This document shows, one piece after another, positions 35,922 through 60,485 of a stretch of DNA of 64,000 bases (within the stretch, counting starts at the first letter, position 1; each line of letters starts with the position of its first letter). Both the position numbers and the translations under genes were made by a program. The stretch is taken from positions 51,274,001-51,338,000 of the forward strand of contig NC_088859.1 of the NCBI RefSeq assembly GCF_963853765.1, in the 5' to 3' direction. The notes below the pieces were generated by a model, which ran no database searches, was not told the DNA's origin, and was given only the letters and a program-made list of their open reading frames with translations. The stretch is from Magallana gigas. Taxonomy: Eukaryota.

Positions 35922-38900
35922 TCAATCTAGCACAGGAATACTGTATGTATCATCTGTTGTTGCTAGGTAACTGACGCCATCTAGAACTGTATGACTGTAG
36001 GTATCGTCTGCTGTGGTGGCAAATCCATGGTTAGTGGCGCCACCTGCGTGATCATAAGTATCGTCTGCCGTGGCAGAGCTTCGATTGTTTGTGGCGCAAT
36101 CTGTGTGACTATAGTAATCGTCTGCAGTGGTGGCGAATCCATGATTTGTGACGCTGCCAGCGTGGGTATAGGTATCCTCTGTGGTATCGGACGCCTTATG
36201 GCTGTTTGCGTCATCAGCGTGGTCGTAGGTATCGTCTGCTTGACCGCCAGTAGGCGTCTGCCATAAATGATCGTACGACAAATCTTCACGAGAATTCTGC
36301 TCTGAATAAGACGGGACAGAATTGGCGTATATGTTAAGGTGAACTTCGTGTTTCTTCTCATTTGCCTCATTAAGACAGTCATAACTGACGTTGTCCTGAC
36401 TTAAGTTCTTGTGTCCTCTTTTCACCGGACTAAGCTCAAAATTACTGTATCCATTGGTTTTGTTTATTTGCTCTTCATTAGAAGACACCCCATCTGACTG
36501 TCTACGGAAGTAATTTTGACCTCTTTTTAATGAGTTTCTTTTTCGTCTTCTGTGAAAAATTCGAACAACATAATGAATTAAAGTTCATCAACAAATTTTG
36601 TCCAACATAAAATTTACTAGTATATAAGGGCTTACCGGGGGAAACGTTTAAAGTATTTTATGAGTGCATCAATGAATTGTTATCTAACCCACCTAAGCAT
36701 AACTTCCACAGATGAAATTACTTCTTGTCAACTTTTTTATCCTTGTTAAAAATAAAACGAAGTACCTTGACTTTATATTACACCTGACAAGCATCCTCCT
36801 ACCTTGTATAAAGTAGGAACAGCCCAATAACGGCTAATAGAGCGGCAATGGTTCCACACACAGCCAATAAGATTTCTCTAAGTTCTACTAAAAAAGATGG
36901 TGTCCATGTTTTGAGATGTACTGAATGATTTATAATATAACCCTTTGTTTATGATAATATGATAATACACGTAAAACATAAGTTATCAAACATTGAAAAA
37001 CTTATATTTAAACTCTAGCAAGCCTCTTCTTATGATTTAGTACAAACAGTGCAGAAAAACGATTTAGTTATTAGATATGTGTAGTAGAATTGACGAGATA
37101 GTTACTTTGGTTATCCTTGTTATTATTTTTTAAAAACGAATTGGATGAGACCGACGATGCTTGATTTGATGTTTGACTTGTTGGCGCCAATGAGCTACTT
37201 GTCGACGCTTGAGTGGTCGGCGCCAATGAGCTTCTTGTCGATGCTTGAGTAGTTGGTGCCAATGAGCTACTTGTCGATGTTTGACTGGTTGGCGCCAATG
37301 AGCTACTTGTTGATGTTTGACTGGTTGGCGCCAATATGGTACTTGTCGACGTTTGATTGAGTGGCGCCAATGAGCTACTGATCGTGGATTTTGTTGTTGT
37401 TTCCGACACGTTCTGAATTTAAAAAAAAGTTTCATTTTAATTGAATTTTTCTCTTGTACAAAATAATCGTTTTTGTTAACAATTATCATACTTAATGATA
37501 TACCAAAGACGCGTTTGGTGCTAACACATTAATTATTTTAAGATACCTGTTCACAAACTGCATTGTTATGGTCAGAACAGGAAGTTAATGAACAGGAGCT
37601 CTGATGACAGGTTTCACATTGCAGTTGTAGAGAGTATGATAAATCTGAAACAAGAGGTAAATTTACATCAAATTTGTTTTCTGCATACAACAAAAATACA
37701 TTAAGTGACAGAACCATACATGTTAGCTACAATAAAATTAAAATTAGGTCTTAGATCCGCTCACGTACGATCACTACACTTGTATAGCGTATCGTAGAGG
37801 AGCGGATTTACAAGTCTAATTTTAATTAGATTGAGTTAGCAATAGATTTTATTTATAAATACGTACCTAACGAAGATGAAGTAAAATTTTGTCTGACTAT
37901 TCCAACCCAAGTGTCAAGACTTCCAGTAGGAATTCCATTACAGGAACTGACTGGATCCATCACGTCGTAATCACCATGTAAATATAGCCCCTCATTTTTA
38001 CAATTCTTGTAACAGGTAATCCAACTCCAGTTTGAGTAATTAGTGTCATTAAGTTCTACAATTTATATCAAACAATTTTTAGCATTGCATTTCACCATTT
38101 TGTCAATACATTAACATTGAACGTGGAACCATAATTTTAGCCAATTTATTCAAGTGAAACCCATTTTCCATTTAAATTGTCAAAATGGATTCAAAGCTTA
38201 TCAAAAACCATATATAAATCTTCAGTTTGCAAGCTTTAGGGCTTGAATTTTGTCGTTATTTGAGGCTGCTAGTGACAAAAGTTACAGTTGTTTCAGTGAT
38301 AAAGCATTCATTTACGGTGATCTCAAACCATTTAACATGAGTCATAGAATATGATGAAACAACACCTCCAATAAGTATGTGGTTAACATTTTGACAAAAC
38401 AGTTTGATTAACTTTAATTCATTTTGTATTTGTTTCAATATTGGTACTTAGTTTGGTAATACTTTTTTATCTGTACAACATCAATTAAAAAGAAAATCAC
38501 CATAAATATTTTAGATAAACAGAGTACTAGTCATCGACAGAAAAACCAGATGGAAAATTGATGTGAAAAGGGAAATGTACATTTATTATACACAATCCGA
38601 AAATGTAAAAGTTTCCTTTCTACCAAGAATTTAAATGTTTTTTTTATGAATTACTTTTTTCATATGCATACAACATTTTGATAATATAATTCAAAGCCAG
38701 TTTTGATTCATCCACTCACACATTCATGCTCACATTCACCCAGATTTGGCAGTGATTGATTGTTTAATAATGAAAAACAATTAATATAAATAATAAAAAA
38801 AGATAAAACAAAAACCGAAAAATCACTGAATTGTATCAAATATATGTTTCCATACAAGCCAGTTGTTGGTAAACTTTTGCATTTGAAATTTCTGACATGA

Positions 38901-41149
38901 AATATATTTTTCAAATTTGTATTTGTGATATAAATAAAATAACAGCCCTGATAGACTAGGCAGTATATCTTTTTTAAAACAGCAAAACAAATATTGTTTT
39001 GTATACAACATTATAAAGTATACGACTTTATTGTCTTTCGACAATTGGAGTTCACCAAATAAGATATTAATAACATGCTTTGGTTGCTCCAAATTGTTGA
39101 TATTTTTTCACAACTTACTAAAACATGTTGGATTGTCTCAACTTCACGTTCACAAAAGGAACAGCAATCAGAAGCTATTTCATTGATTTTTTTCAAATAG
39201 TAATTTACAGGAAGAATTCTATGAAGTAGTCTGTATTGTAACAATTGAATAGATGAGTCATTAGTTGTCTTAAAACATACATTGAAAGCATCATAAATAC
39301 AAATTTCCACCCATATTGTACTAATTCTGAACGTGTTCTTGCTTTTGAAACAAAATTTGAAAAAGAAATAAAACAAATGTGTTTAGGCTGTTATTAAAAG
39401 TTAGGAACGAGTAATTTGGAATAATTTTGACACCGCCGAAAAAGTCCCGTTATGACAAAACAAAAGGCTCGGGAGCCACATCGCTCAAGTGAACAACAAA
39501 TTAAATGACAAGTTGTACCTGTGCCTGGGCGTCTACATTGGCAGTTGACAGTCAAAGTGGAGGATTGCCGATATACAAATTCCCTTGGTGAACATTTCAG
39601 AGCCATGTATGTTGCATTTAGGTCATGCTCGTCAAGAAATACTAAATCTCCTTTTAAAAAAAAGCGTAACAATGTATCATTTTTTGCAACTTGTTTCAAT
39701 CAATATGATCTAATGAAGACATTAGCAAACTGTGGAAAAATGTGACTGAAGGCCTGAACGCAGATTGAAATAAAAGTGAAAGTATTTAACCTGCTTTATA
39801 AACACTGTATGTCCCGGGGCCGCCACAGTCGTTAAGGACCTCGGATGTACTGCAGGATGTATTGCATAAACGTGGATCAATGGCTTCTGTGACGGAAAAT
39901 TGGTCACTTAGACAGACACAGCTGGTGTTCTTAAAGAGTAAAAATAATAGTAAATTTTTTTTACTTTTTATTAGTAAATGTTTTGGTAAATTTTTACAGC
40001 TGATGTTTGCTAAACTGCCTTGATAATTTTCCCATAAATTAAATGATTTTTTTTTTGTAAATTTAAAAGTATGAACTTTGAAAAAATCAGCCTTTTTGTT
40101 CAACAGCGTATGCGCATCGATTGTAAACATTTCAGTATGGCTTTCAGCATAAATTTCGACAGATTTGGCGAAAAAAGATCAAAAGAGATGAATTGAGACA
40201 AAACAGAAGTGCGAACTATAATTTTGTTCAAGAAAATAATGTAAAATGTACTTGTATCATCAATACATTCTTTTATCAAAAGAAAATTATTCACATCAAG
40301 GTCTGCTGAGCATTCCCTTTTCCCTTCCTCGTCAGGTTTTTTAATTCACATAATGTTTTAACAGTTTCTGACGTAATATATAAGGTTAAACTCTAGCACA
40401 AACAGCTCATATAAAATACACTGCTTAACGCATTATATAGTAAAGGAATGTATTCATTATATGCAGAAATGTCATGAAATACCTGAAGTCCAAAGAAAAA
40501 GTAATATGCCATGGAACATGTTTGCTGACACGTGACCACTGACGGAGAGGTCAAGGTCTTTTTCACTGTCTGTGACAGGTCTATCTGAGTCTCTTTAAAG
40601 CACCCTTAATCATAAAGGGTTAAAAAACAGAAAAATATAAATCTTTACACATTCCATTGAATTAATAAGTAAGCTTTTCAAATCATGTAAATTAAACTCT
40701 TTAAACAGCTAGACTTTTTCTGCATGTAGTAATGAAGTATCAGAACATGCTTAAGGTGTAAATTTGTTGTTCTGTACCATCTGACTGTATACCAGCTCAA
40801 GGTATTATTTAGATAAGAACCGTACCGATGACATGAATCCAAGGAGACAATCTCCGTTGCTTTCTTGTCCAGTACCCCTTGCCTTGGTCTGTCTGTGTGG
40901 TTTGTATGGGAGAAGACACAAGAGTGGAGTTTCTTTTCATGCAGTACTGTGCAGCCGCGGTCCAGTTCATGGTCGTATTAGATACAAACATCTCTTGATG
41001 CAAGTCGTTACCTTAAAAAAGGAAATTATTAAACTGAGAAATATTATTATTATTTTTCAGTTAAGAACAACCGATGTCTTCAAATACTTACTTTGAATAT
41101 GATGAATATGCATCCACAAAAACAGAAACATTCTAAAACATAGGTCCAT
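35922..41149 (-). CDS. Receptor copy A: C-type-lectin-like/WSC type I membrane protein, 647 aa, long Tyr-rich tail
   Basis: 10 GT-AG exons, all in phase, 1944 nt: 41149-41092 (signal peptide MDLCFRMFLFLWMHIHHIQS), 41011-40826, 40604-40483, 39929-39791, 39650-39519, 38055-37867, 37644-37547, 37412-37106, 36887-36803 (TM), 36549-35922. WSC pattern GCF...CQQTC...CVCL...CNTSC...CGGPGTYSVY. Confidence 0.85.
37166..37381 (-). repeat. Coding 36-bp tandem repeat (6 x SSSLAPTSQTST-like) in the mucin stalk of copy A
   Basis: LAP recurs every 12 aa in exon 8; ggcgccaatgagct recurs every 36 bp. Confidence 0.9.
38640..39328 (-). mobile_element. 5'-truncated L1/Tx1-type LINE fragment in intron 5 of copy A
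   Basis: QYRLLHRILPVNYYLKKINEIASDCCSFCEREVETIQHVLVSCEKISTIW is the zf-RVT-type C-terminal motif, followed by ILFG...WLVWKHIF. The block is absent at the aligned site in copy B (about 48345-48370). Confidence 0.8.
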
Positions 41150-41167
41150 TTTAATGAACACGTTTAC

Positions 41168-41228
41168 CTTTAAAACTTCCGCCTGTTATCAGGAGATAGG
41201 GATTTTGCGTTTCACCAAAATCGTAAAT
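41168..41228 (-). promoter_or_regulatory. Conserved upstream block of receptor copy A (also at about 50161-50221 for B and 60504-60562 for C)
   Basis: ctttaaaacttccgcctgttatcaggagatagggattttgcgtttcaccaaaatcgtaaa is nearly identical about 20-80 bp upstream of all three ATGs; it contains ETS-like (gcggaagt), GATA-like (gataac) and kB-like (gggatttt) words. Confidence 0.5.
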
Positions 41229-41272
41229 AACGCCAAATTAAACAATAACGACATGAATACATATAGCTTTAA

Positions 41273-41748
41273 AGGGGCATGGTTACGATTTTGGTCAACA
41301 ATCATTTTTTCGATTTTAATATTTACAATGTTTCAGAAAGGCATTTTAAATAGGCAACCGAAATTTGAGTATCATTTGTTAAGTTTAAACGAGTTACAGA
41401 GCTTAAAATTCTTCGCTATGTAAACAGAGCGTTTGTTTACATTTTGAACGGTGAAGTAAAAATTTCAGTTTTAAAACTAAAACGCAAGCAACTGTTTATC
41501 TATGCTTAAAATTGATAAAAAGATAGACAAATAAGCTAGAAAAATATTTACTGGTATATTGAACATATGTAAACAAAAACAGGGCACGAGCCTTTTTTAC
41601 ATGACAAAGAATTGTAAGCCCTGTGTCTTGCTTATATCTCTACGAATGACTCTCAAATTTTATTTGATCATTAGAAATGCATTTATAAAGCACTGTAAAT
41701 AATAAAAACATAAAAACTGAATTTGACCAAAATCGTGACAATGCCCCT
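41273..41748. mobile_element. Non-autonomous Kolobok-like element (476 bp) upstream of copy A
   Basis: TIR aggggcatggttacgattttggtcaa / ttgaccaaaatcgtgacaatgcccct; TTAA TSD (41269-41272, 41749-41752); purine-purine start fits Kolobok rather than piggyBac. Empty site gctttaaaggagtac seen upstream of copy B (about 50259-50273). Confidence 0.85.
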
Positions 41749-43357
41749 TTAAAGGAGTACACATAGTCTATAACCAATGCAAACTTAGTTTTATGTATAC
41801 GTATACAGGAAAACTTTAAAGACATAAGAAGCATTATTTATTGTTCATATCAAATTAATGTCATCAAGATTTTAGGGTTTTTCGACGAAGAGAAATTGCA
41901 TATTTTGTAAAAACAATGGATTTGAATTAAGAAAACCGATGTTTGGTGAATAATACAATAGTTTCACTTTTATTCCTTTGAAATAATTTATATGTAACTA
42001 TCTCAAATTGATGAGTTTCAATTTGGCAATTAAATAAGTTGCTTTGAAAATCAAAGTTTAAAAAGGTTAAATCATAGTTTCAATTGTAATAACGTTTAAT
42101 CCTAGTAAGTAGACTGTGGAATGCAGTTGCATCATATTGTCAATGCCTATGGTTAAGAAATGACCAGTTTATGATATAAACCGAGTGTGATACTAGATGC
42201 TATCCCGGGAATTAAAACCTTACCCATTAATGACACAATGCTAAAAGTTGAACCATAAAGTAGTATTTATATATATATTTTTTCGTATATACTGTGACTG
42301 TCCGGTTTCTTTCTTAATTGCTTTCTTAACCTTTTCATTGGTTATATACCCAGATGAACCTACATAGATTAAGAGAACCCAATAATAATTTTTAACAAAA
42401 TATTTAATAACAAATTTAAGAACACAAATAAAATAAAAATTTAACGGAAAGAAATTATCAAAATAAACTTAACAAAATAAAACAAAATAAAGTTATATAA
42501 TAATGTTTTTTTTTCTAATCCATTTCCGACGCTCGTGGTTTTGAAGAACCTTCAGGCGAGCAAAGTTGTTTCAGTTGAATTATCACATGCTGCACGGGTC
42601 TACCGAGGTTACATAGAACGAAGAATGTTTTCTTTGGTGATGCGAATGACCCACCGCCTGGTTCACGCTGATTGGAAATTTCTTTCAATATACTCAATTT
42701 ACAGAATATGGGTTTCAAGGAACACACATCATATAATTATGAATATCAAACTTTTACAATATTTAGTTATATAATACATCTACATTAATGATAATGAACT
42801 TGTGAAACTGCAAGGAGCACCGGCTGGTATAAAATCACAACTGGATTTTAGAGATGTGCCAAAAGGGCCGCCATAGTTCACCCACTCAATGCAGAACAAT
42901 GGCTTCTTTAAAATATTCCCCAGAAAAAGGAAAGGGCTACTCAAGATAAGCCGGTAATAATTGCGCACCCGAGAACCTTCCTTTCATGACAGCTATTGAG
43001 GTTTTGTAGGGACGGAAAATTTACTATTTATATTGGTTTAAGCATAACAGGAGGTCAAAGGACCTTAATGGTAACCTGAGTATGCTACAATCTTGTTCAT
43101 AAAAATATTCATAATTTACTGATAGAGGAAAATATCATTTAGGGGGAACAGATTTGAGAAGAGATAATTAATTGAGTGAAATATTTGGTATTTCGTTTTT
43201 CTCTTTCTATGTGTGATACAAACCAAACTTTAGTAAATTTAGGAAAGAAACTCTAGACATTATACACAATACGACAGTTTGATCGATCATCTACTGTCTT
43301 TTATCTTGAGATTAAGCGGAATCTTTCAGGTTTTTTTTTTGGGTTTGTTGATATATG

Positions 43358-43360
<3 letters not shown>

Positions 43361-43394
<34 letters not shown>
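43361..43394. repeat. (AT)n microsatellite
   Basis: About 17 AT units. Confidence 0.95.
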
Positions 43395-43397
<3 letters not shown>

Positions 43398-44608: not shown

Positions 44609-47600
44609 TTATTCTCTTAAAGAGTCATAATGATGTTCATCATGTGAGTAATTTTCATACTTTGTTGTTACCGTTTGAAGCATAATGCAATCGTATTTAT
44701 TGTTTACTTCTCCGTGAGTAACATATTTAACTGCCTGAGAACAAGAAGTAGATGAATCTTTTGCGTTGTTTCTCTTTCGTCTTCTGTAAAATGAAAACAA
44801 GGAACTAAGTTCATGAAAGCAGAATAATTATCACAAAATATAATTGGGAAATGTTAAAAACAATTATGCTAGGATATGACAAACAAATTGGCTGACATTG
44901 GTTTAAGATTTTAGGAGAAACATATTTCGGCAACCAATCGCTTATGTCGAAGAAACTAATGCCAAAAATAAGAGCATTTAATGTTGAGCTTTGTAATTCC
45001 TAAATGGTCTCGAAACATACATGTAGCATTTTCGCCGAAGGAAAAATTTGAGAATAATAATATCTAAGTTTTATTCGTTTCTATTTTATTTCACTGTTTT
45101 ACAGGAATTTACTGGTTGCAGCGATTAATTTACGGGATTAAAATGTGGATTATTATTCAATTTGAAGACTGGTTTGCGGTGAGAAGTATTCGCGAAGACA
45201 AGGGTCTCCAAAATACGCTAGTTGTTTATTTAAGCTAAAATTTAAAGTCATATAATTCATTTGATTTAGGCAGAATTTCTACTGTGGATTTTATGCAGAA
45301 AAATCAAAAACACATATTAAAGTGTAGAAATCAGGTTTAGCTAAATATAATAAATATAGTTTAAACTAAGTTTATTCTACATTTATGTTATTACAAATAT
45401 AGCATGGAATCCGTAATAAATGCTATTTAAATTATAGTTACAGCGAAATCAAACTTAATTTATTTTATCTGCGTAAGCATATATATAAAGAAGAACATCG
45501 GATACAATTTTCATTCATACTAAAATACTTTCATCTTACTTTGCATAAAATACCAGCAGACCAATTGTAGTTGTTATAGCGACAATAATACCACCAAGAG
45601 TGAGCAAGACTTCTTCGAGTTCTACGGAGAAAAAGATATTGCAATTATTTTTGTTTTTGCAGGAAGAAAAAAACAATTTTGTTTATTGCAACAAAACTTT
45701 GATACTCATACCTAACTGATTATTTCAGCCTAGAAAAACATATATGTAATTGAGAATTCTTTATCATGAAAAATATTTCAAAGGTACCCATCTTAGAAAT
45801 ACTAAGAATTAAAGACACTAAAATACACATTTAGTAAAGGGCACAAGAAGTAGAACACATAGATTTCCACAGATACGAAAATTAAGACAGAAGGACTAGA
45901 TTTTTCTTTGACAAACACATTTTGATAACCGACAGAATTAAACACCAAATGTATACAGGCTGGAAGATGCATTCCATATTTGATAATATACTCCTCCTTG
46001 TCTTTTGATAAGATAGCAATATGTTTATCAAAACATTTTACTTTTTTAAAACTCTCTTCTACATGACAAACAATGCAGAAAACGATTTAGTTATAAATAT
46101 TAAGTTGAAATGACAAAAGAATTACTTTGCTTATCACCGTTTTTGTAATTATTATATGGATTGAAGGAAACTGATGGTTCTTTGTTTGATATTTGAGTGG
46201 TATGAGCTAATGAGATTCTTGTCGTGAGTTTTGTTGGTTCTAACAAGCTCTGAAATTAAAATAAATGTTAAAACACTAGCAATATTTTGCTTTATAAAAA
46301 AGTGAAATTTTCATTTCTTGAAAAAAATAACCAATTCTTCACAAATAGGAATTTATGCTCAATAATATTCTAAAGAAGAATTTGGATACTAAGACATCTA
46401 ATGTATTAAATCAACCTGTTCACAGAGTGCGTGGTTATGGTCAGAACAAGATGTAAATGAACAGAAGCTCTGATGACATGTTTCACATTGCAATTGCAAA
46501 GAGTACGATAAATCTGAAACAAGAGGTAAGTATGTATCAAATTGTTTTCTAAATACATCAAAAATACATTTAAGTGGCAAAACCATACATGTTAGCTGAC
46601 ATGTTAACTGATTTTATTTATACGTACCTAATGAAAATGAAGTGAAATTTTGTCTGGCTATTCCAACCCAAGTGTCAAGATTTCCTGTCTGAGTTCCATA
46701 ACAGGCACTAACTGGATCCACCACGTCGTAATCCCCATGTAAATATTGTCCCTCTTTTTTACAATTCTTGTAACAGTCTTTCCAATTCAAGTTTGAGTAA
46801 TTAGTGTCATTAAGCTCTACAATGTACATCAAATAATATTTCAGCGTTGCATTTACTGATGATTCGATACATTAACATTTAACGTGGAACAGTAATTTCT
46901 TTAGTTTAGTTTGCTAGCTTTAGAGCTTAAATGTTTTTGAAACGTTTTTTGAGGCTGCTAGTGACAAAGGTTGCAGTGTTTCAGTGACAAAGAATTCATT
47001 TGCAGTTATCTCATTCTATTCACTTTATATGAATTTCAAAAAATGATGAAACAAGAGGTCCATGGGCGACATCGCTCACCGGAGAAATAATAGGTATGAT
47101 AAAATCAGCTGAATACAGTCATAATACAAGCTATCTGGATAATTTACAATAATACATGCATATCCTGAATAAATAAAATCAATTCTTCTGAATATTTTAA
47201 TGGTTATTATCATTAGTCCATATTCTAACAGAATTACCTTATAGTAATATCACATGAATACCATTTCCTACCCTGGATATTATAATGTTTATAATCATTG
47301 GTACTTTTCTAACAGGATGATTTACAGTCATTTACAGTCATATCACATGTTGAGTATTGCAGTTATCAAAAAGATCCATAACAATTGTTTATATAATGGA
47401 AATAAACCTTAAATCAAACTCTGAACCCTTTGTGAGGCCGAAGAATTGTCCAGGGACTAAAGAAAGTCTTAACAATGATAAAGAAACACCTGGCTGATTA
47501 GTTCCTTAGATAAAGAATTTCAGGATTTACTGTACATATTCCTATGTAAAACTTCGACCCAATGTGCCGCCTTCCCCAAGGTGTCATGATATTTACAACA

Positions 47601-50143
47601 GTGAATCTACCTGAGGATGCTTCCACACAAATTTTTAGCTTTCCTTGATGATTCATTTCTGAAAAGCAGACTTTTTAAGATTGCTCGATATTTCAAAATA
47701 TGAAACGTCGACCCTCACTGTGGATGCACGCTACCTTCATAGGTCATGATTTTCGCAACTGTGAATCTACACTACTTGAAAATGCTTTAACTCAAGTTTT
47801 AGCTGCTTTCCTAGCTTATTTTTTTCTAATAGGAAGATTTTTAAAGAATTTGTCAAAAATTGTCAATAATTCATAATTATCTACCTTTGTAAAAGAGTGT
47901 GGTTCTTTAATTTCACAGCTTTGAATCTTATTTGCCTAATGTTGCTTTGTGTCAATTTTGATTGAAATATACCCAGTTGGTCTTCAGCAGATGTTGAAAA
48001 TGTGGAAAGTTTACGGATAGACAGACTGACGGACAGACAAAATTGATCAGAAAAATCACTTAAGCTTTCAGCTCAGGTAAGCTAAACACGCTACCAATAA
48101 GTATGTTGTTACTATTTTTACAAAACAGTTTATATAACTTTTATTCATTTCGTATTTGTATCAATATTGGTACTAAGAGTGGTGATACTTTTATCTGTAC
48201 AACATCAATTGAAAAGAAATGCACCATATTTTAAAAGAAAAACAGTTCTAGTCATCGACAGAAATATCAGATGAAAATTGGTGTGAAAAGGAAAAAGTAC
48301 ATTTATATTACACCATTCGAAGAGAATGAAAGGTTTCCTATCTGCCAAGAACTTGAATGTGTTCTTGCTTTTGAAACAAAATTGAAAGAAAAATAAAGCA
48401 ATTGTGTTTTAACTGTTATTAAAATTAAGGAACGAGAAATTTGGAATAATGACACTGCCGAAAAAGTTCCGTTATGGCAAAACAAGAGACCTAGGGGCCA
48501 CATCGCTTATATGATCAACACTTTAAATTACAACTTGTACCTGTGCCTGGGCGTCTACATTGGCAGTTGACAGTCAAAGAAGAGTATTGCAGATAAACGA
48601 ATTTCCTTGTTGTGTCTGAACATTTCAGAGCCATGTATCTTGCATTTAGGTCATGCTCGTCAAGAAATACTAAATCTCCTTTAAAAAAAGAGCGTAACAA
48701 TGTATCATTTTTTGAACCTGTTTCAATTAATATGATCTAATGAAGACATTAGCAAACTGTGGAAAAATGTGACTGAAGGCCTGAACGCAGATTGATATAA
48801 AAGTGAAAGTATTTAACCTGCTTTATAAACACTGTATGTCCCGGGGCCGCCACAGTCGTTAAGGACCTCGGATGTACTGCAGGATGTATTGCATAAGCGT
48901 GGATCAATGGCTTCTGTGACGGAAAAGTGGTCACTTAGACAGACACAGCTGGTGTTCTTAAAAAGTTAAAATACAAGTAAATTTTTACACTTTATTGGTA
49001 AATGTTTTGGTAAATTTATACAGCTGATTTTACTAAACTGCCTTGATAATTTTCCCAATAAATTAAATGATTTTTTTGTAAATTTAAAAGTATGAACTTT
49101 GCAAAAATCAGCCTTTCGTTCAACAGCGTATGCGCATCGATTGTAAACATTTCAGTAAGGCTTTCAGCATAAATTTCGACAGATTTGGCGAAAAAAGATC
49201 AAAAGAGATGAATTGAGACAAAACAGAAGTGCGAACCATAATCTTGTTCAAGAAAATAATGTAAAATGTACTTGTATCATCAATACATTCTTTTATCATA
49301 AGAAAATTATTCACATCAAGGTCTGCTGAGCATTCCCTTTTCCCTTCCTCGTCAGGTTTTTTAATTCACATAATGTTTTAACAGTTTCTGACGTAACATA
49401 TTAGGTTAAACTCTAGCACAAACAGTTCATATAAAATACACTGCTTAACGCATTATATAGTAAAGGAATGTATTCATTATTTGCAGAAATGTCATGAAAT
49501 ACCTGAAGTCCAAAGAAAAGGTAATATGCCATGGAACATGTTTGCTGACACGTGACCACTGACGGAGAGGTCAAGGTCTTTTTCACTGTCTGTGACGGGT
49601 CTATGTGAGCCTCATTAAAGCACCCTTAATCATAAAGGGTTGAAAAACAGAAAAGTATAAATCTTTACACATTCCATTGAATAAGTAAATAAGCTTCAAA
49701 TCATGTAAATTAAACTCTTTAAACAGCTATAATTTTTCTGCATGAAGTATCAGAACATGCTTTATGTGCAAATTTGTTGTTCTGTACCATCTGACTGTAT
49801 TAATTAGATAAGAACAGTACCAATGACATGAATCCAAGGAGACAATCTCCTTTGCTTTCTTGTCCAGTACCCCTTAACTAGGTCTGTCTGTGTGGTGTGT
49901 ATGGGAGAAGACACGAGTGTTGCCTTCTTCTCCATGCAGTACTGTACAGCATCGGCCCAGTTCATGGTTGTATTAGATACAAACTTCTGTAGATGTAAGT
50001 CGTTACCTTAAAAAAATTAACAAACTGAGAATTCTGATAATTATTCAGTTAAGAATAACCGATGTTATCAAATAATTACTTTGAATATGATGAATATGCA
50101 TCCACAAAAACAGAAACAAAAACATTCTGAAGCACAGGTCCAT
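44609..50143 (-). CDS. Receptor copy B: C-type-lectin-like/WSC type I membrane protein, 438 aa, short tail
   Basis: 10 in-phase GT-AG exons, 1317 nt: 50143-50080, 50006-49821, 49624-49503, 48956-48818, 48678-48541, 46816-46628, 46513-46416, 46249-46126, 45621-45540 (TM), 44783-44609. No internal stops found. Confidence 0.85.
47050..48086 (-). mobile_element. Non-autonomous Helentron (HINE) in intron 5 of copy B
   Basis: Ends aacaagaggtccatgggcgacatcgctcacc and (gaca)n...ttcagctcaggtaagctaaa; absent at the aligned site of copy A (gatgaaacaacacctccaataag). Confidence 0.82.
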
Positions 50144-52990: not shown

Positions 52991-54063
52991 TTAAACATTG
53001 TTTTTCTCTTTTTATGTGTGCTACCAACCAAACCTTAGTAGATTTAGGAAAGAAGCTGTAAACATTAAACACAATACAACAATTCGATCGTACTTCTACC
53101 GTCTCTTTTCTTGAGATTAAGCGGAATCATCAGAGGTTCTATTTTTTGTTTTGCTGATATATATGTAGATATACATTATGCGAAACAAAACCAGTTTATA
53201 ATTTAAAGCAGTCATTTACTGTTTAGAGATCTTAAGATTTAAGTGAGGTATTTGTTTCACCCGCTTCAATCGTTCAATCGATCTAATTGTCCTGTATTGA
53301 TCTAGCGCTATGTGAAATTCATCAATAAGAATTGATAAAAATGGGTGACTTTTTCATTTTTCTGCTAATCTCACTTTGTGAGGGGAATGTAAACGAAAAT
53401 ACACAAAAGACAATTCCAGAGAGCAATTATCATAATGGTGTAGCTTTCTACAAATATTTTTGATAGGGTACTCAGTGTACATGTAAGGTATCCGTATTCT
53501 ATTTGTATTTATCCCTGCAAAACTTCTAGTCAGACGTTCAATATAATATCTTTTAAAAGTTAACGTATTATTTTAAACAGCTTTCATTATTTTAATTATT
53601 TGATAAATATACATTTGGTCAAAAGTAATGTTTTAGTATGCATTTGAAACATAAAAGACATTTTTACAGCATTTTCTGCAAACTTGCGTATTAAAAAGAG
53701 TTTAACTATTGCTGTGTGATTACAAAATTATATGGCTGCAATACTTTCTTTCATGAAAATTTATACTGCATACTCTGACATTCAAGAGTAATTTTTGAAA
53801 AGTAACTAACATCCTGCACAACGTAGCTCATGCCATATTTTAGTGGAACGATTTTACCCTTCCCCTGTAAGAAAACGTTTGTAGCAAAGTCATCAATCTC
53901 AGGGGTGCCCTCTGGAGCTGACTCCATATATCGTAGATTCTAGCGTTAAGTCAAAAAATTTCAGACAAAATGAATGGATTAATGAGTTCTGTCTGTTAGG
54001 GGAGAAAGATGTCCATCTCCATGGTCATCCTACCGACTTGCAGGATTACCCGACTTTCTGGAT

Positions 54064-57000
54064 TTACTCTCCTAAAGAGTCATAATGTTGTTCATCACGT
54101 GAGTAATTTTCAAACTTTTTTGTTACCGTATTAAGCATTATGCAATCGTATCCATTGTTTAGCTTCTCTCGAGTAACAGATTGAACTGCCTGAGAACAAG
54201 AAGTAGATGAACCGTTTGTGTTTTCCCGCTTTCGTCTTCTGTAAAATAATAACAAAGAACTAAAGTCACATTTTTTCACAAAATATAATTGGCATATGTT
54301 GAAAACATCATTGGTATGATATACAAACGGTTTAGAACAAATCCCCTCACTGTCATATAAGTTCACGTAAAATGACCTTGATTTCCTATTAAATTTTTCA
54401 AACAAAAAATATACTCGCTCGGTTCAGCGAAGAACCAATTTGCCTCAACTTGACTTCTAGTAAAAAGTCTTCTTCACCCCTTTACCAGGAACAACTCAAA
54501 CAAACACTTATGATTTATATCAAATCGCCACTTTCCTACAAACAATTGCTTAGGTAGAAGAAACTATTGTCAAAAGAAAGAGACCATATAATGTTAAGCT
54601 ATGTAGTTCCTAAATTGTCTCGAAACACACATATAGCATTTTCGCTTGAAAGAAAAATTTGAGAAAATTGTTATGACTGTTTAATTCGTTTTTATTGTAT
54701 GTCACGGTTTACCAGAGATTCACTGGCTACAGCAATTAATTTACGGAATTAAGATGTGGATTAATCTAAAAATAGTATACAAGAGACCTTTGAAGAGTGG
54801 TTCGCGGCGAGAAGTATTCACGAAGACGAGTGTCTCCAAAATAATTCGTCGGTTTACACTATAAATTTTTGAAGACATATAATTTATTTGATTTAAACGA
54901 AATTTCTACAGTGGATTTTATGAATAAAAGTCAAACATAAGAATTTGATATTCAAGTTTAAAAAATAATGTTTATCAAAATATAACCTTAGTCTATGCTA
55001 CATTTATGGTATTACAAATGTAGCATGACATCCATATCAACAACTATTTAAATTAAAGCTACAGCTAAATTAAACGTAATAAATTTTATCTGTGTTTGTA
55101 TATACATAAAAAAGGACATCGGTTACAATTTTCAACCATACTCATCTTACCTTGCAAAAAATACCAGAAGAACAATTGTAGTTGTTAAAGCGATAATAGT
55201 ACCACCAAGAGTCAGCAAGATTTCTTCGAGTTCTACAGAAATAAAGATATTGCCACACTATTTAGTTCTCCAGAAAGGCAACACTATTTTGTGTATCACA
55301 ACACTACTTTGATACTGTGTCGACAAAAATAATACAAGTTAGCAGCAATACTTTGATATTGTGGCGACAGAAACGAATAATACAATTTAGCAGAGATTTT
55401 TGTGTACAAAAAATGAATTTGTAAAAAAAGATATGAAAGTTAACTACAAATATATTTAAATAAATGAGAAGTTGCAGATTACATGTATTACAGTTTTATA
55501 CCTAATGAATTTGTAAAAACCTACAAAAGCATAATGATAATGATTAAGAATTCGTTACAATGAAAAGTATTTCAAAGGTATCCATGTAAGACTGCATAAG
55601 AATCAAAGACACCCAAAAAAAAAACACTCTCAGAAAAGGACTTTTTAATCAGAACCCCCAGATTTCTTAAATGCTGGTTGAGGTGAATAGACTTTTCAAC
55701 TATCTCTCGAAATTTACGATTCTTAGTAAACCAAAACCACATTCAAATCGTGTAAAAATGAGAGGTTTTTTCCGAGACGTATATAAATTATAAAAGCAGC
55801 TAGGTAAAGAAAATTAAGACTATTAATATTTTCTAAGACTGTTTTTCCCTATCAAAACAGCATTTCGATAACTGATTGATAAATAGTAGATAAAAAGTGT
55901 CCTAGCTGTAAGATACACTATATAGTTTTTAATAAAGCTCCCTTTGTCTGTTGATAATATAACAAGATATGATTATCAAACCATATTACTATTTTACATT
56001 ACAAGCAATGCAGAAAACGGTTTTATTAGATAGAAAATATTTAGTAGAATTGACGAAATAGTTACTTTGGTTATCATTATGAAATTGATTGGAGGAAACC
56101 GAGGATGCTACGTTTGACGTGTGACTAGTTGGCGCCAATGAGCTGCTTGATTTTGGTTTTGTTGTTTTTAACAAGCTCTGAAATAAAAATTAACGTAAAA
56201 AAGTGCAGTTTTCATTTTTTGCACATAATAACTAGTTCTTTGCAAATAAGAATTTATTCTCAATAATTTGTTAAAGAAGAATTTGGATGAAAATACATTT
56301 AGTGTGTTGAATTAACCTGTTTACAAACTGCATGGTAACGATCAGAACAGGAAGTTAATGAGCAGTTGCTCTGACGACAGGTATCACATTCAGAACAGGA
56401 AGTTAATGAGCAGTTGCTCTGACGACAGGTTTCACATTGTCGTTGTAGAGAGTATGATAAATCTGAAACAGAGGTAAAAATATGCATCAAATTTGTTTAA
56501 ATTTATGTATACATCAAAAATATATCTAAGTGACAAAACCATACATGTTAACATTTGATTTTATATATACGCACCTGAAGAAAATGAAATAAAATTTTGT
56601 CTGGCTATTCCAACCCAAGTATAAACATTTCCTGCCTGAATTCCTTGGCAGGCACTAACTGGATCCAACATATCGTAATCCCCATGTAAATATTGTCCCT
56701 CTATTTTACAATTCTTGTAACAGTCTTTCCAATTCCAGTTTGAGTAAACAGTGTCAATAAGTTCTATAATTTATATCAAGTAATTCTTTAGCATTGCAAT
56801 TTACTAATTTTTATATACATTTACATTTAACATGGGACCGTAATTTCATTTAGTTTGTCAAGTAAATCCCATTTTTCATTTAAATAGTGAAAATGATTTC
56901 AACGCTCATCCGAAATCATATATAAATATTCAGTTTGTAAATGAAGAGCTTAAATCATTGACGCAGTTTGCAGTTGCCTCAGTGAAAAAGAATTCATTAA

Positions 57001-60000
57001 CGTTTATCTCTGACAATTTAATTAATATATAAATAAAGACTTACGATGACACAATGCTACCAATAAGTATGTTGTTACCATTTCAACAAAACAGCCTGAA
57101 TGACTTTTTAGATATTTCTTATTCGTTTCAATATTGGTACTTGATTTGATAATACTTTTATTGGTACAAGATCAAATGTTAAAAAATGCGCTATAAATAT
57201 TTTTTAGGTAAACAGAGTTCTTGTCATTGACAGAAAAACTGGATGGAAAATTAATCTAAAAGAGGGAAATATTCGTTTATTATACCCCATCCGAGGAAAC
57301 AATACAAGATACAAGTTTCCTTTTGCCAAAATAATGAATGCATTTTTGACTTTTAAACAAAATTTGAAAACAATATAGTCAATGTGATTTTTACTGTTGT
57401 TATTAAGAAGGAACAAAACATTTGGAATAACTGTGCCATCGCCAGAAAATCCTATCACGGCAAAACAAGAGGCCCAGAGGCCACATCGCTCATATGATCA
57501 ACTCATTGAATTACAACTTGTACCTGTGCCTGGGCGTCTACATTGGCAGTTGACAGTCAATGTGGAGGATTGTAGATATACAAATGTCCATGTTGTTTTT
57601 GAACATTTCAGAGCCATGCATGTTGCATTTAGGTCATATTCGTCAAAAGATATCAAATCCCCTTTGAATAAATGAGCGCAACAAATGAATGCATAATTTT
57701 ATAGTGATCTGTTTTAATATATATGATCTAACGAAGACATCGATAAACTGTCAAAAAATTTAACTGAAGGTCTGGGGCTCGTAACATAAAGCATGCTAAG
57801 ATTTTGACTCAAGAAGGGTCATAAGTAGGACTTAGGCGCAATTTTAGGACCTACATAAGTCCTTATACCGTAACATAAAGCAACTTTAGCAATGTCTTAG
57901 CTAAGTCATGTTTATGTTAAAAAGTAAAAACATATTTTTCATTTCTTTTGTCGAATTTGAATGTATTGGTAATAAAATCATATTTTCATAGATGCACGTG
58001 CATGACATCTTTGGTATTAGATGGGGCAGATGTAAATGTACAGACACAACATTCAAGGTGGCATGAGTATATATACACATGTACTTAAAAATGTTTAAAA
58101 GCTCAGAGCGATGGATCTCGGTCAATATATTCAGTCTATTGTTGTTGCTTCTTTGTTTTGACGAATATTCACTATTGTGGTCGTTCTCGAAGACTGCCTG
58201 TGGCGTAATATCTCGATGCTGTTATAACTTGATATAATTAGGAAGCGGAAGACCCTCTTGTTTTTTTTTCGGTTTCTTTTTATTTTAATTTTATTTTTTT
58301 TATTTTTTTCTGACTCCTTCTCGGCTTTATATTTCAAAAAGTTTTCATCTGATTTCCCTGGAATTTTCCGAGCTTTTGTAAAGTTACCTTGCCACAACGA
58401 TGTTAAAGTTTCAGCATTTACGTCACTTCCGTTCAAATTTGACAGCCATTTTTAATTTTTAAAAAATTTCCATAAACTTTAAAGATATCGCTTTGAAATT
58501 TTTACAGATGATAGATGTATCAATTCTATGGTGTACTGGGGGGTTTAAAATTTTATTCATCAATTTAGCTTAAAACCGGAGGAAGTTCCAATTTTTGGAA
58601 ATTTTCATTTTTTTAACAAAAAAGACAATATTACAGTTTTATAGAATTTGCCATGGTAAATTCAAATCTGAAATCTGTTTTAAAATCGGACGATGCATTG
58701 CATAGATAGTGGGAATTAAAAATCGATTTTTCCGGAAATTTGACTCCGCGTTCTAGGTTTAAAAAATAGCGTCAAGTTCAATCTCGTATCAAAAATAGTT
58801 CGATTTTTGTTAAGTCTTACTTGACACGTTCGGATTTTTTTGTTAAGTCGTTCTTGAAATTGTAAAGGTTTTTGTTAATTCGTACTCAGAATCATTCGGA
58901 TTTTGCTAAGTCGTACCAAGAATAATTCGATTTTTAATTTTTTTTTGTTTAAGTTACCCTTTTTAATGGTTTAAGAACTCTCCTTCTTACAGGAAAATCT
59001 AGCTTTACTCTCGACATTAACGTAAGACCCACTTTGCAACGAGCTCTGCTCTAGTTATATAGTGGATTTCTTTTCATCTTTTGTTCTACATTTTACCCCA
59101 CCAATAAGGCAATTCACATATTCTGGTTATAATTTCTTCATTAAGTCGATAATTGAAAAGAGGCAATCGTCATCTTTAAATTCACTGAGGGTTTTTCTGT
59201 CTTCAAACGTCCATAGCTTCTTCAATTTCTCAAGTTTCGCGAGTTTATATATTCAGTTTCTTTTTGTAAACTTAAGACATACTTAAGTCACCTCTACCAG
59301 CCGCCTAAGTTTTGGGTAATTTGTTCTAGCTAAGCACTCATCTAGTTACGGACTTAAGTCTAAGAATGTACATAAGTCGTACTTAAGCATTGTCTTAGAC
59401 TTCAGTACCTTTTATGTTACGAGCCCAGATAACAGATTTAAACAAGTGTATAAGTATTCAACCTGCTTCATAAACACTGTATGTCCCGGGGCCGCCACAG
59501 TCGTTAAGGATCTCGGATGTACTGCAGGATGTATTGCATAAACGTGGATCAATGGCTTCTGTGACGGAAAAGGGGTCACTAAGGCAGACACAGCTGGTGT
59601 TCTTAAGGAGTGAAAATTAAAGTAATTTTTTGAGGTAGCATTCAACATAGTTTTAACCGTAAGAACATTAAAAACGACATTAAAACAAACAGTGAATGTT
59701 TAGACACGTAAAGAAGATGATTGTTGTTTTAACAGTTTTCGAGGTAATGTATAAGGTAAAACACTTACACAGACTGTTTAAGACGCTAAATTAATATCCA
59801 TGCACATAAAATACTTTGTTTAACGCCTGCGAAAGAAAGGTATCTATTCTTAGGAGTGCTTGTATATAATATTAGTAAGAAATGACATATACCTTAAGTC
59901 CAAAGAAAGTATAATGTGCAGTTGAACACTCTTGTTGACACGTGACCACTGACAGAGAGGTCAAGGTGTTATTCACTGTCTGTGACGGGTCTATCTGAGT

Positions 60001-60485
60001 CTCTTTAAAGCATCCTTTATCATAACGGATGAGAATATAAGACAATTGTAAATTATTGGTTGTATCTTTTACAGGTTATCTCATGTCGAAACAAATTCAT
60101 TAAAACTCTAGTCAATGTACTTATTTGTGTATATTTCCTGTTTTGTACGTATTACTCAAATGAAATCCATACCTATGACATGAATCCAAGGAGATATTCT
60201 CCATTGCTTTCTTGTCCAGTGGTTCCATTCATGGTCTGTCTGTGTGGGAGATGACACGAGGATAGAGTTCCTCGTCCTACAGTACTGAACAGCCTCGGTC
60301 CAATTCATGGTTTTGTTCGATACAAATTCATTTAGATACAACTCGTTACCTTTGAAAATAAGATTTTAAAATACTGTGATTGAAGATAGTTAAGTAAAAA
60401 CCCCGGTATATAAATACTTACTTTGGATGTAATTAATAAATATACACAAGAACAGAAACATAAACATTCTGAAATACTGGTCCAT
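54064..60485 (-). CDS. Receptor copy C: C-type-lectin-like/WSC type I membrane protein, 447 aa, short tail
   Basis: 10 in-phase GT-AG exons, 1344 nt: 60485-60422, 60349-60173, 60014-59893, 59601-59463, 57661-57524, 56763-56575, 56462-56317 (with a 48-bp in-frame duplication), 56177-56066, 55232-55151 (TM), 54238-54064. Confidence 0.85.
57772..59428. mobile_element. TIR element (about 1.65 kb, Harbinger-like) in intron 4 of copy C
   Basis: TIR ctggggctcgtaacataaa / tttatgttacgagcccag; subterminal cttaagtc-type repeats; absent from intron 4 of A and B. TSD not clearly resolved. Confidence 0.7.
58099..58758. mobile_element. Possible TTAA-flanked element nested inside the intron-4 insertion
   Basis: ttaa|aagctcagagcg ... 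cgcgttctaggt|ttaa, with only weak terminal complementarity. Confidence 0.3.

What the first reader, a model, noticed from the sequence alone, without database searches (positions are those of the whole stretch)
35922..60485. Paired-receptor-like cluster: three WSC/C-type-lectin-like membrane receptors with shared ectodomains but different signalling tails
Seen: three intact 10-exon paralogues. WSC exon 4 is almost identical in all three, but copy A has a ~210-aa tail with 14 Tyr, including two ITIM-consensus matches (VSYDCL, LSYDHL), while B and C have ~59-aa tails with YDCI and a terminal HYDSL and no strict ITIM. Known: vertebrate paired receptors (KIR, Ly49, Siglec, CD300) couple similar ligand domains to opposing outputs; WSC domains bind glycans such as beta-glucan or xylan in fungal and other proteins. 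Inference: this may be an invertebrate glycan-sensing paired receptor module with an inhibitory or scaffolding copy A and differently wired copies B and C. This is my best candidate for an undescribed system here, but novelty is unverified without a literature or database search.
Basis: partly seen in the sequence, partly recalled or inferred. Interest (0 to 1): 0.75.

Follow-up and report, generated by a model that had tools for sequence, protein, structure and literature searches.

The report
Oyster WSC-lectin receptor genes, different tails
Three neighbouring Pacific oyster genes encode membrane proteins with a sugar-binding-type (WSC) outer part and different tyrosine-rich inner tails; the genes are real, but nothing yet shows they work as an on/off receptor pair.

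Summary
The window is Magallana (Crassostrea) gigas chromosome piece C7. I rebuilt three intact minus-strand 10-exon GT-AG genes: A 41149-35922 (647 aa), B 50143-44609 (438 aa) and C 60485-54064 (447 aa).

- **Check against RefSeq:** model B is identical to XP_065923099.1. C exons 2-10 equal XP_065923360.1. A is annotated only as a 220-aa truncated product.
- **RNA support:** RNA contigs confirm six of A's nine introns, including an exon 8-9-10 contig that carries the long tail.
- **Domains:** WSC passes Pfam's threshold in A and B. The C-type-lectin likeness stays below threshold.
- **Tails:** A has 208 aa, 14 Tyr, VSYDCL and LSYDHL. B and C have 57 aa, YDCI and HYDSL, and no ITIM match.

- B is a mosaic. 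It is 85-98% identical to A across exons 1-5 and their introns, but its membrane and tail exons are of the C type.
- The B/C tail is homologous to the membrane-proximal 61 aa of A's tail, motif for motif.
- A fourth copy and a distant three-gene cluster on chromosome piece C1 exist.

The "paired receptor" reading is only partly supported. The short-tail copies have no charged membrane residue, tail dN/dS is near neutral, and no functional or tissue data were obtained. This scan also noted B's chimerism separately.

The parts
35922..41149 (-). Gene A, 10 exons, 647 aa. Exons: 41149-41092, 41011-40826, 40604-40483, 39929-39791, 39650-39519, 38055-37867, 37644-37547, 37412-37106, 36887-36803, 36549-35922.
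   Evidence: Hand-built GT-AG model. Exons 1-5 equal RefSeq XP_065921951.1 residues 1-212. RNA contig joints at 36549|36803, 36887|37106, 37412|37547, 37644|37867, 39650|39791 and 39929|40483.
44609..50143 (-). Gene B, 10 exons, 438 aa. Exons: 50143-50080, 50006-49821, 49624-49503, 48956-48818, 48678-48541, 46816-46628, 46513-46416, 46249-46126, 45621-45540, 44783-44609.
   Evidence: Model. It is identical to RefSeq XP_065923099.1 (P0024). It is a mosaic of an A-like 5' half and a C/D-like 3' part.
54064..60485 (-). Gene C, 10 exons, 447 aa. Exons: 60485-60422, 60349-60173, 60014-59893, 59601-59463, 57661-57524, 56763-56575, 56462-56317, 56177-56066, 55232-55151, 54238-54064.
   Evidence: Model. 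Residues 36-447 equal RefSeq XP_065923360.1 (P0030). The older model XP_034312939.1 covers exons 1-7 of a C-like allele with the same junctions.
39791..40604 (-). WSC domain of A, encoded by exons 3 and 4 (40604-40483 and 39929-39791). The equivalent exons are B 49624-49503 / 48956-48818 and C 60014-59893 / 59601-59463.
   Evidence: Pfam PF01822: 34.0 bits for A and 30.6 bits for B, over the full profile 2-82 of 82, against a threshold of 27.8. The best PDB sequence hit is 7pz2, the yeast Wsc1 sensor domain, E 0.005. Weak fold matches to Wsc1 and KREMEN1, Z 4.6-4.8.
40826..41011 (-). Exon 2 of A: a piece that resembles the N-terminal half of a C-type lectin domain. Exons 6-7 (38055-37867, 37644-37547) form a second, similar Cys-rich module.
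   Evidence: Pfam Lectin_C matches only below threshold: E 0.016-0.11, 13.7-16.4 bits, profile positions 2-61. Mincle, CLEC10A and TC14 C-type lectin domains at E 0.05-0.4. Language-model features of exons 6-7 lie nearest Lectin_C clusters, score 0.86, a lead only.
37106..37412 (-). Exon 8 of A: a Ser/Thr-rich mucin-like stalk containing a 36-bp (12-aa) tandem repeat, 5.9 copies, at 37168-37379. The stalk is much shorter in B and C.
36803..36887 (-). Exon 9 of A: the single membrane-spanning segment, with no charged residue inside it. The equivalents are B 45621-45540 and C 55232-55151.
   Evidence: This is the only Kyte-Doolittle 19-residue peak of 1.4 or more in each protein (2.73, 2.27 and 2.25). 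A against B/C is only 11-12 of 27 identical; B against C is 21 of 27.
35922..36549 (-). Exon 10 of A: a 208-aa cytoplasmic tail with 14 Tyr. It contains ITIM-consensus VSYDCL (36372-36389) and LSYDHL (36264-36281), and about 19-aa repeats that each carry a DDTYxH-type motif (57-bp repeat, 3.3 copies, 35992-36181).
   Evidence: The tail is held in RNA contigs joined to exon 9. It is unique in the genome. Orthologous ORFs of 61-91% identity occur in other oyster DNA contigs next to the same GPCR genes.
44609..44783 (-). Exon 10 of B: a 57-aa tail with YDCI (44684-44695) and a terminal acidic HYDSL (YDSL at 44618-44629).
   Evidence: It aligns end to end with the first 61 aa of A's tail (33% identity, E 0.003).
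54064..54238 (-). Exon 10 of C: a 57-aa tail with YDCI (54139-54150) and YDSL (54073-54084).
   Evidence: Only B, C and D carry this tail type in the genome.
38644..39328 (-). A-specific insertion in intron 5: a LINE reverse-transcriptase fragment. It supplies the terminal exon (acceptor near 39230, stop soon after) of the annotated truncated 220-aa product of A.
   Evidence: The stretch is absent from B and C in blastn. Pfam zf-RVT 37.3 bits. The ending of the RefSeq product maps here.

Best explanation
The locus is part of a small, oyster-restricted family of type I membrane glycoproteins.

Each protein has, in order:
- a signal peptide;
- a short piece like the N-terminal half of a C-type lectin domain;
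- a true WSC domain;
- a second C-type-lectin-like, Cys-rich module;
- a mucin-like stalk;
- one membrane span;
- a tyrosine-motif tail.

I take them to be glycan-binding surface receptors. On this reading their output runs through phosphorylation of a family-wide acidic Y-D-x-L motif. That motif is VSYDCL and LSYDHL in A, HYDSL in B and C, and ATYDHL in a chromosome-1 paralogue. This would resemble the hemITAM-to-Syk route already shown for the oyster lectin receptors CgCLec-HTM and CgCLec-TM1.

A, B and C therefore share the same basic wiring. A adds about 150 aa, with roughly 19-aa DDTYxH repeats that could act as a multi-tyrosine scaffold. A also has Val or Leu at position -2 of both Y-D-x-L motifs, which could in addition admit an SHP2-type phosphatase.

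Recombination or gene conversion recently gave A and B nearly the same N-terminal ligand-binding half, while each kept its own membrane and tail module. The same ligand is therefore probably read by two tails.

Shown: gene structures, the WSC domain, topology features, the motifs, the mosaic, and RNA for A's 3' exons.

Inferred: glycan binding, phosphorylation, the partners, and any difference in output.
For: - **Gene models and RefSeq identity:**
- **RNA joints for A,** including exons 8-9-10.
- **WSC above Pfam's threshold:**. PDB Wsc1 sequence hit. Weak Wsc1/KREMEN fold matches.
- **Topology:** one hydrophobic span, 6-12 N-glycosylation sequons and 20-25 Cys in the ectodomain.
- **Selection:** ectodomain dN/dS is 0.36-0.50, which is purifying.
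- **Tail homology:** A's proximal tail aligns with the whole B tail, with motif-for-motif correspondence.
- **Chromosome-1 paralogues:** about 35% identical, with the same module order, a membrane span, and a tail ending in an acidic ATYDHL.
- **Motif persistence:** the motifs are retained in orthologous A-type tails of other oysters.
- **A/B mosaic:**
- **Published oyster hemITAM lectin receptors** signalling through Syk-ERK to IL-17/TNF: PMC12842671 and PMC13027682.
Against: - Tail dN/dS is 0.64-0.73 for A orthologues and 0.86 for B against C. The membrane exon of B against C gives 1.17. None can be told from neutral.
- Tyrosines are not significantly better conserved than other tail residues (10/12 against 103/154, p = 0.34).
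- Copy D has a 2-bp deletion that removes its motifs.
- One A-type orthologue has a premature stop.
- RefSeq annotates A and D only as truncated soluble products.
- The exon 5-6 junction of A was not seen in RNA.
- The acidic run before Tyr is weaker than the tri-acidic hemITAM signature.
- No ligand, tissue or phosphorylation data were obtained.
Confidence: 0.45

Rival explanations
1. True paired receptors. A is an inhibitory, ITIM-bearing, SHP-recruiting copy. B and C are activating copies that see the same or similar glycans, so the cluster sets a threshold for a glycan-triggered response.
For: - A has two ITIM-consensus motifs, more than shuffled tails give (P = 0.033). They are kept in orthologues and lie 36 residues apart.
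- B and C lose the consensus only through His at position -2.
- The A and B ectodomain halves were homogenised recently while the tails stayed distinct, as in vertebrate paired families.
- The genes are clustered.
Against: - B and C have no charged membrane residue.
- The spacing of 18 residues does not fit a canonical ITAM.
- A's first ITIM is the positional homologue of the B/C terminal motif, with nearly the same +1 to +3 residues.
- Selection on the tails is near neutral.
- There is no evidence of co-expression or opposite signalling.
- C is only about 72% identical to A in the ectodomain.
Confidence: 0.17
2. Endocytic or scavenger lectin receptors. The YxxL/I/F motifs are unphosphorylated AP-2 sorting signals that drive uptake of bound glycans or microbes, and the tail differences only tune trafficking.
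For: - Every copy has YxxΦ-type motifs (YSNF, YDCL and YDHL in A; YDCI and YDSL in B/C) at typical distances from the membrane or C-terminus.
- The lectin-like ectodomain sits on a mucin stalk.
- From general knowledge, many lectin receptors use such motifs for uptake.
Against: - The acidic context and the many extra DDTYxH tyrosines in A look more like kinase substrates than sorting signals.
- Related oyster lectin receptors are reported to signal through Syk.
Confidence: 0.2
3. Mainly secreted lectins within a gene family undergoing birth and death. The functional products are the truncated soluble forms that RefSeq annotates, and the membrane and tail exons are drifting remnants whose motifs are chance matches.
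For: - RefSeq gives A as a 220-aa product ending in a transposon-derived exon, and D as 258 aa.
- D's tail is frameshifted.
- An A-type orthologue has a premature stop.
- Tail dN/dS is 0.64-1.17.
Against: - The 3' exons of A are spliced correctly, and their contig depth is equal to or higher than that of the 5' exons.
- RefSeq models B and C with the membrane span and tail.
- The tail ORFs and stop positions are kept in B, C and D and in several oyster lineages.
- Distant chromosome-1 paralogues keep a membrane span and a Tyr tail.
Confidence: 0.13

Closest known systems
Vertebrate paired immune receptors (KIR, Ly49, SIRP, CD300, PILR, some Siglecs)
   Same: - Tandem paralogues with similar ectodomains.
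- One long tail carries two ITIM-consensus motifs.
- The other copies have short tails.
- Exchange between genes keeps the ectodomains alike.
   Different: - The ectodomain fold is WSC plus C-type-lectin-like pieces, not Ig or a full C-type lectin domain.
- The short-tail copies have no charged membrane residue and carry their own YxxL/I motifs.
- The short tail is homologous to part of the long tail.
- No opposite signalling has been shown.
Oyster hemITAM C-type lectin receptors CgCLec-HTM and CgCLec-TM1 (PMC12842671, PMC13027682)
   Same: - They come from the same species.
- They are membrane lectin-type receptors; CgCLec-HTM also has a C-terminal membrane span.
- Their signalling element is a single acidic YxxL motif, reported to act through Syk, ERK and IL-17/TNF.
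   Different: - Those proteins have a canonical C-type lectin domain and no WSC.
- No sequence relationship was found here.
- The acidic run in B and C is only Asp-Glu followed by two residues.
Fungal Wsc1-family cell-wall stress sensors
   Same: - The order of parts matches: signal peptide, WSC domain, Ser/Thr-rich stalk, one membrane span, cytoplasmic tail.
- Yeast Wsc1 (7pz2) is the best solved-structure match by both sequence and fold.
   Different: - These are animal proteins with extra lectin-like and Cys-rich modules.
- The tails have tyrosine motifs rather than the Rom2-binding tail.
- Similarity is confined to the WSC domain.
Animal WSC-bearing membrane proteins: polycystin-1 (LRR-WSC-C-type lectin) and KREMEN1/2 (kringle-WSC-CUB)
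   Same: - A WSC domain sits in the ectodomain of a membrane receptor.
- In polycystin-1 it lies next to a C-type lectin domain.
- There is a weak KREMEN1 fold match, Z 4.6.
   Different: - The overall architectures and tails are entirely different.
- There is no detectable homology outside WSC.

Membership tests
WSC domain (Pfam PF01822) | A match to the family profile above the curated gathering score, across the whole domain. | tested here: met
   A scores 34.0 bits and B 30.6 bits, over profile positions 2-82 of 82, against a threshold of 27.8. C and D give no hit at E<=1 although they are about 85% identical to A in this region.
C-type lectin-like domain (Pfam PF00059) | A match to the profile above the gathering score (22.6 bits), covering the whole fold. 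| tested here: not met
   Scores are only 13.7-16.4 bits and cover only profile positions 2-61. PDB C-type lectin domains appear at E 0.05-0.4 for about 40 residues. The predicted models were too poor to judge the fold (pLDDT 35 and 46).
ITIM-bearing inhibitory receptor | A cytoplasmic (I/V/L/S)-x-Y-x-x-(L/V/I) motif. | tested here: met
   A has VSYDCL and LSYDHL; B and C have none. P(>=2 by chance) = 0.033.
ITIM-bearing inhibitory receptor | Tyrosine phosphorylation and recruitment of an SHP-type phosphatase with an inhibitory outcome. | not testable with these tools
   This needs phosphopeptide pull-downs and cell assays.
ITAM-bearing activating receptor | Two YxxL/I motifs separated by 6-12 residues. 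| tested here: not met
   In B and C, YDCI and YDSL are 18 residues apart (Tyr30 and Tyr52 of the tail).
hemITAM receptor | A single YxxL preceded by a tri-acidic stretch, with Syk recruitment. | tested here: inconclusive
   In B and C, YDSL is preceded by Asp-Glu and then two residues. The chromosome-1 paralogue has Glu-Glu-Glu-Ala-Thr before YDHL. Syk binding cannot be tested here.
Paired receptor cluster | Closely linked paralogues with similar ectodomains and dissimilar tails. | tested here: met
   The genes are in tandem within 25 kb. Exons 2-7 are 72-84% identical. The A tail against the B/C tail is 19/58 identical in the aligned part.
Paired receptor cluster | The short-tail member has a charged membrane residue for an ITAM adaptor, or its own canonical ITAM. 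| tested here: not met
   There is no Lys, Arg, Asp or Glu inside the membrane span of B or C, and there is no canonical ITAM.
Paired receptor cluster | Co-expression on the same cells and opposite signalling. | not testable with these tools
   Only A could be laid on RNA, and no tissue information was given.

The most novel reading that the evidence does not exclude
An invertebrate paired-receptor module built on a WSC lectin-type ectodomain. The long-tail ITIM copy A and the short-tail hemITAM-like copy B see the same glycan, because recombination keeps their binding halves nearly identical. They send opposing SHP-type and Syk-type signals. This would be convergent with the KIR/Ly49/SIRP logic, in a mollusc.
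Probability: 0.15. Interest if true: 0.75.

Novelty: new variant of a known kind. Interest (0 to 1): 0.5.

Why it matters
Paired inhibitory and activating receptors are regarded as a hallmark of vertebrate immune regulation, and oysters rely on greatly expanded innate receptor families.

This locus offers a compact, testable candidate. Two genes (A and B) have almost the same WSC-type binding half but unrelated membrane and tail modules. A third and a fourth copy serve as natural variants.

The family is named only "uncharacterized protein" in RefSeq. The long-tail form of A is not annotated at all. I found no paper on WSC-bearing membrane receptors in molluscs.

Even if the pairing idea fails, the family adds a new ectodomain type to the tyrosine-motif receptors of bivalves. 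It also shows tail swapping by recombination.

Tried and rejected
- **Structure prediction.** AlphaFold2 on the ectodomain was run twice (9-row and 23-row alignments). Mean pLDDT was 35 and 46, so only the WSC part could be used. Fold search gave Z<5. The idea that WSC is inserted into a split C-type lectin domain remains untested.
- **Full-length homology search.** An exhaustive search with exon 6 found only 9 proteins among 1.84 billion representatives, mostly fragments. Relatives longer than 451 aa, including A-type orthologue proteins, were therefore never searched.
- **Annotation of the window's genome.** The look-up of encoding contigs does not serve this genome.
- **Spliced B/C transcripts.** A search with C's tail found only unspliced genomic ORFs.
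- **Tyrosine conservation.** The test for preferential conservation of tyrosines was not significant.
- **Tail of the chromosome-1 paralogue.** The A tail against the chromosome-1 paralogue tail gave no significant overall similarity, only the shared Y-D-x-L end motif.
- **B/C 3' flanks.** They hold no remnant of A's tail extension.
- **Readings rejected.** A canonical ITAM in B/C (the spacing is 18). DAP12-type adaptor pairing (no charged membrane residue). Membership of the C-type lectin family (below threshold).
- **Literature.** A search for the LOC and XP identifiers gave nothing.
- **Not attempted.** Complex prediction was not used, because no binding claim is made.
Full report
**Where and what.** The window is Magallana (Crassostrea) gigas, contig C7:51274001-51338000. 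The stretch 35.5-61.5 kb holds three tandem copies on the minus strand. Nucleotide identities between copies run from 70% to 91%.

**Gene models.** I read stop-free segments and matched splice phases. This gave three complete 10-exon models with AG/GT at every intron.
- A: 41149-35922, 647 aa.
- B: 50143-44609, 438 aa.
- C: 60485-54064, 447 aa.

The finding's limits are A's stop codon and C's start codon.

The models were checked in two independent ways.

*First, against RefSeq.*
- Model B is identical to XP_065923099.1.
- C residues 36-447 are identical to XP_065923360.1.
- A residues 1-212 are identical to the start of XP_065921951.1.
- That last protein is a 220-aa product. It leaves exon 5 for a terminal exon near 39230.
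- This terminal exon lies inside an A-specific insertion (38644-39328), which is a LINE reverse-transcriptase fragment (zf-RVT, 37 bits).
- The long-tail form of A is therefore not annotated.

*Second, against RNA.*
- Twenty indexed runs from 9 studies hold at least half of the sampled words of A's tail exon. Two of them are on record as RNA, twelve more are guessed to be RNA, and six are of unknown type.
- Contigs of three runs (two on record as RNA, one guessed RNA) show joints at exactly my coordinates for A's introns 3, 4, 6, 7, 8 and 9. One 575-nt contig runs through exons 8, 9 and 10 with at most one mismatch per piece.
- Introns 1, 2 and 5 were not covered. The link between the two halves of A therefore rests on reading-frame continuity and on the homologous junction in the B, C and D models.
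- Contig depth over A's 3' exons is equal to or higher than over its 5' exons.
- A's tail is unique in the genome, so these contigs are A's own.
- Reads could be laid only once, so B and C expression was not tested directly.

**Protein anatomy.**
- Each protein starts with a short hydrophobic leader ending in Ile-Gln-Ser.
- Exon 2 gives weak but consistent matches to the first 40-60 positions of C-type lectin domains. Pfam scores are 13.7-16.4 bits against a cut-off of 22.6. Mincle, CLEC10A and TC14 appear at E 0.05-0.4.
- Exons 3 and 4 encode a WSC domain. It passes Pfam's threshold in A (34.0 bits) and B (30.6 bits) over the whole profile. C and D fall below reporting.
- The best solved-structure match, by sequence and by a weak fold comparison, is the yeast Wsc1 sensor domain (E 0.005; Z 4.8). 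KREMEN1 comes next.
- Exons 6-7 form a second Cys-rich module. Its language-model features lie nearest to C-type lectin clusters (score 0.86, a lead only).
- Exon 8 is a Ser/Thr-rich stalk, about 100 aa in A with a 12-aa repeat and about 40 aa in B and C.
- Exon 9 is the only strongly hydrophobic span and holds no charged residue.
- The ectodomains carry 6-12 N-glycosylation sequons and 20-25 cysteines.
- Both AlphaFold2 attempts were poor (pLDDT 35 and 46), because the family is tiny. An exhaustive profile-free search of 1.84 billion representatives with exon 6 found nine proteins, mostly oyster fragments.

**Tails.**
- A's tail is 208 aa with 14 Tyr. It has ITIM-consensus VSYDCL and LSYDHL, 36 residues apart. 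It then has about five 19-aa units, each with a DDTYxH-type motif.
- B and C have 57-aa tails with YDCI and, 18 residues later, a near-terminal HYDSL. They have no ITIM match and no canonical ITAM.
- Two ITIM matches in A are modestly more than shuffling gives (mean 0.30; P = 0.033).
- The whole B tail aligns end to end with the first 61 residues of A's tail (33% identity, E 0.003). YSNF aligns with YDCI, and VSYDCL with HYDSL.
- The short tail therefore equals the proximal part of the long one. The ITIM difference at the shared motif comes down to Val against His at position -2.
- No remnant of A's extension lies downstream of the B or C stop codons.

**Evolution.**
- Ectodomain exons 2-7 are under purifying selection (dN/dS 0.36-0.50).
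- Exon 4 stands out. It is 43-45 of 46 residues identical, and dS is only 0.03-0.10, against 0.2-0.6 in most other ectodomain exons. The conserved nucleotide block extends about 30 bp into both introns. This points to short-tract gene conversion or nucleotide-level constraint rather than protein selection alone.
- B is a mosaic. It is 85-98% identical to A from the promoter through intron 5, introns included. Identity drops to 71-86% over exons 6-8. From exon 9 onward there is no detectable similarity to A, and B resembles C and D instead at 71-91%. This agrees with another note of this scan (s1-375856).
- The membrane and tail exons of A and of B/C differ at saturation (dS above 1.6).
- A-type tails with the same motifs occur in DNA contigs of other oysters at 61-91% identity. 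They sit beside the same rhodopsin-type GPCR genes as in the window. The two tail classes are therefore old.
- Constraint on the tails is weak. dN/dS is 0.64-0.73 among A-type orthologues and 0.86 for B against C. The B-C membrane exon gives 1.17. None can be distinguished from 1 with these counts.
- Tyrosines are not significantly better conserved than other tail residues.
- One A-type orthologue has a premature stop, and another has lost its stop.

**A wider family.**
- A fourth copy, D, lies about 36 kb beyond the window's high-coordinate end (C7:51374153-51379639, minus strand).
  - It has a C-like tail, but a 2-bp deletion just after the exon-10 acceptor removes the motifs.
  - RefSeq gives D as a 258-aa soluble product. 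That product confirms the exon 2-6 junctions.
- Three tandem genes on C1 (23.38-23.44 Mb) share the module order at about 35% identity. At least one has a membrane span and a roughly 130-aa tail with SGYDTI and a near-terminal acidic ATYDHL.
- An acidic Y-D-x-L motif is therefore the one tail element common to both clusters.
- Between C and D, on the plus strand, lies a related gene with two compact lectin-like modules and no WSC.

**Reading.** The structural claim is solid: these are clustered type I membrane proteins with a WSC-type ectodomain and two tail classes.

For function I favour glycan-binding surface receptors. Their shared Y-D-x-L motif would be phosphorylated and read by SH2 proteins, as published for the oyster hemITAM lectin receptors CgCLec-HTM and CgCLec-TM1, which act through Syk, ERK and IL-17/TNF (PMC12842671, PMC13027682). 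A would carry an added multi-tyrosine scaffold.

Two results fit it:
- the A/B ectodomain homogenisation;
- the conserved Val/Leu at position -2 in A.

Several results count against it:
- the short-tail copies lack a charged membrane residue;
- there is no canonical ITAM;
- the tails are homologous motif for motif;
- the tails evolve almost neutrally.

Two further rivals remain open. One is endocytic sorting through YxxΦ motifs. The other is a largely soluble, decaying family.

**Comparison with the literature.** Searches for the WSC domain together with oyster or mollusc, and for the gene identifiers, found no description of this family. A review of invertebrate IgSF proteins reports a canonical ITAM receptor (CgIgIT2) in this oyster, and hemITAM lectin receptors are also published for it. 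The novelty therefore lies in the ectodomain type and the tail-swapped pair, not in the signalling principle.

Noticed in passing
G000:C7:51374153-51379639 (minus strand), outside the window; loci L001 and L002: This is a fourth paralogue, D. It has a C-like short tail, but a 2-bp deletion just after the exon-10 acceptor shifts the frame and removes the Tyr motifs. RefSeq annotates it as a 258-aa soluble product (XP_034312968.2).
   Followed up: yes
window 38644-39328 (minus strand): A LINE reverse-transcriptase fragment (zf-RVT) is inserted in intron 5 of A only. It provides the acceptor (near 39230) and the stop of the only annotated A product, so a transposon insertion creates a truncated soluble isoform.
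   Followed up: partly
G000:C1:23383101-23445600 (loci L009-L011): Three tandem distant paralogues (about 35% identity) have the same order of modules: a lectin-like half, WSC, then a lectin-like module. At least one (L011) has a membrane span and a roughly 130-aa tail with SGYDTI and a terminal acidic ATYDHL.
   Followed up: partly
L003:3614-7184 (plus strand), that is C7:51341614-51345184, just beyond the window: This is a related gene on the opposite strand. It has two compact C-type-lectin-like modules, a Cys-rich piece and a Thr/Lys-rich stalk, but no WSC exons. A similar exon also lies near C7:51387807.
   Followed up: no
window 28195-35474 (plus strand): Three single-exon rhodopsin-type GPCR genes (Pfam 7tm_1) lie tail to tail with gene A. 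The same GPCR and A-tail neighbourhood is kept in DNA contigs of other oysters (L004-L007).
   Followed up: partly
L008:1566-2390 and protein P0017: A-type tails in other oyster samples vary in several ways. One has three extra 19-aa Tyr repeats and an in-frame stop about 60 codons before the usual end. Another has lost the stop and runs on for 7 codons.
   Followed up: partly
window 41267-41298 and 37786-37833: Short stretches reach very high depth in all RNA runs (summed depth of thousands at the first, hundreds at the second), with loose ends on both sides. There is also an inverted joint at 37786/37815. These are probably small repeats that are expressed elsewhere, not part of gene A.
   Followed up: no
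window 59463-60014 (WSC exons of C): The WSC domains of C and D fall below Pfam's reporting level although they are about 85% identical to those of A and B, which pass the threshold.
   Followed up: no
window 1210-1290 (plus strand): There is a single Rfam tRNA match (33.7 bits). It lies within the stretch that another note describes as an intronic tandem array.
   Followed up: no
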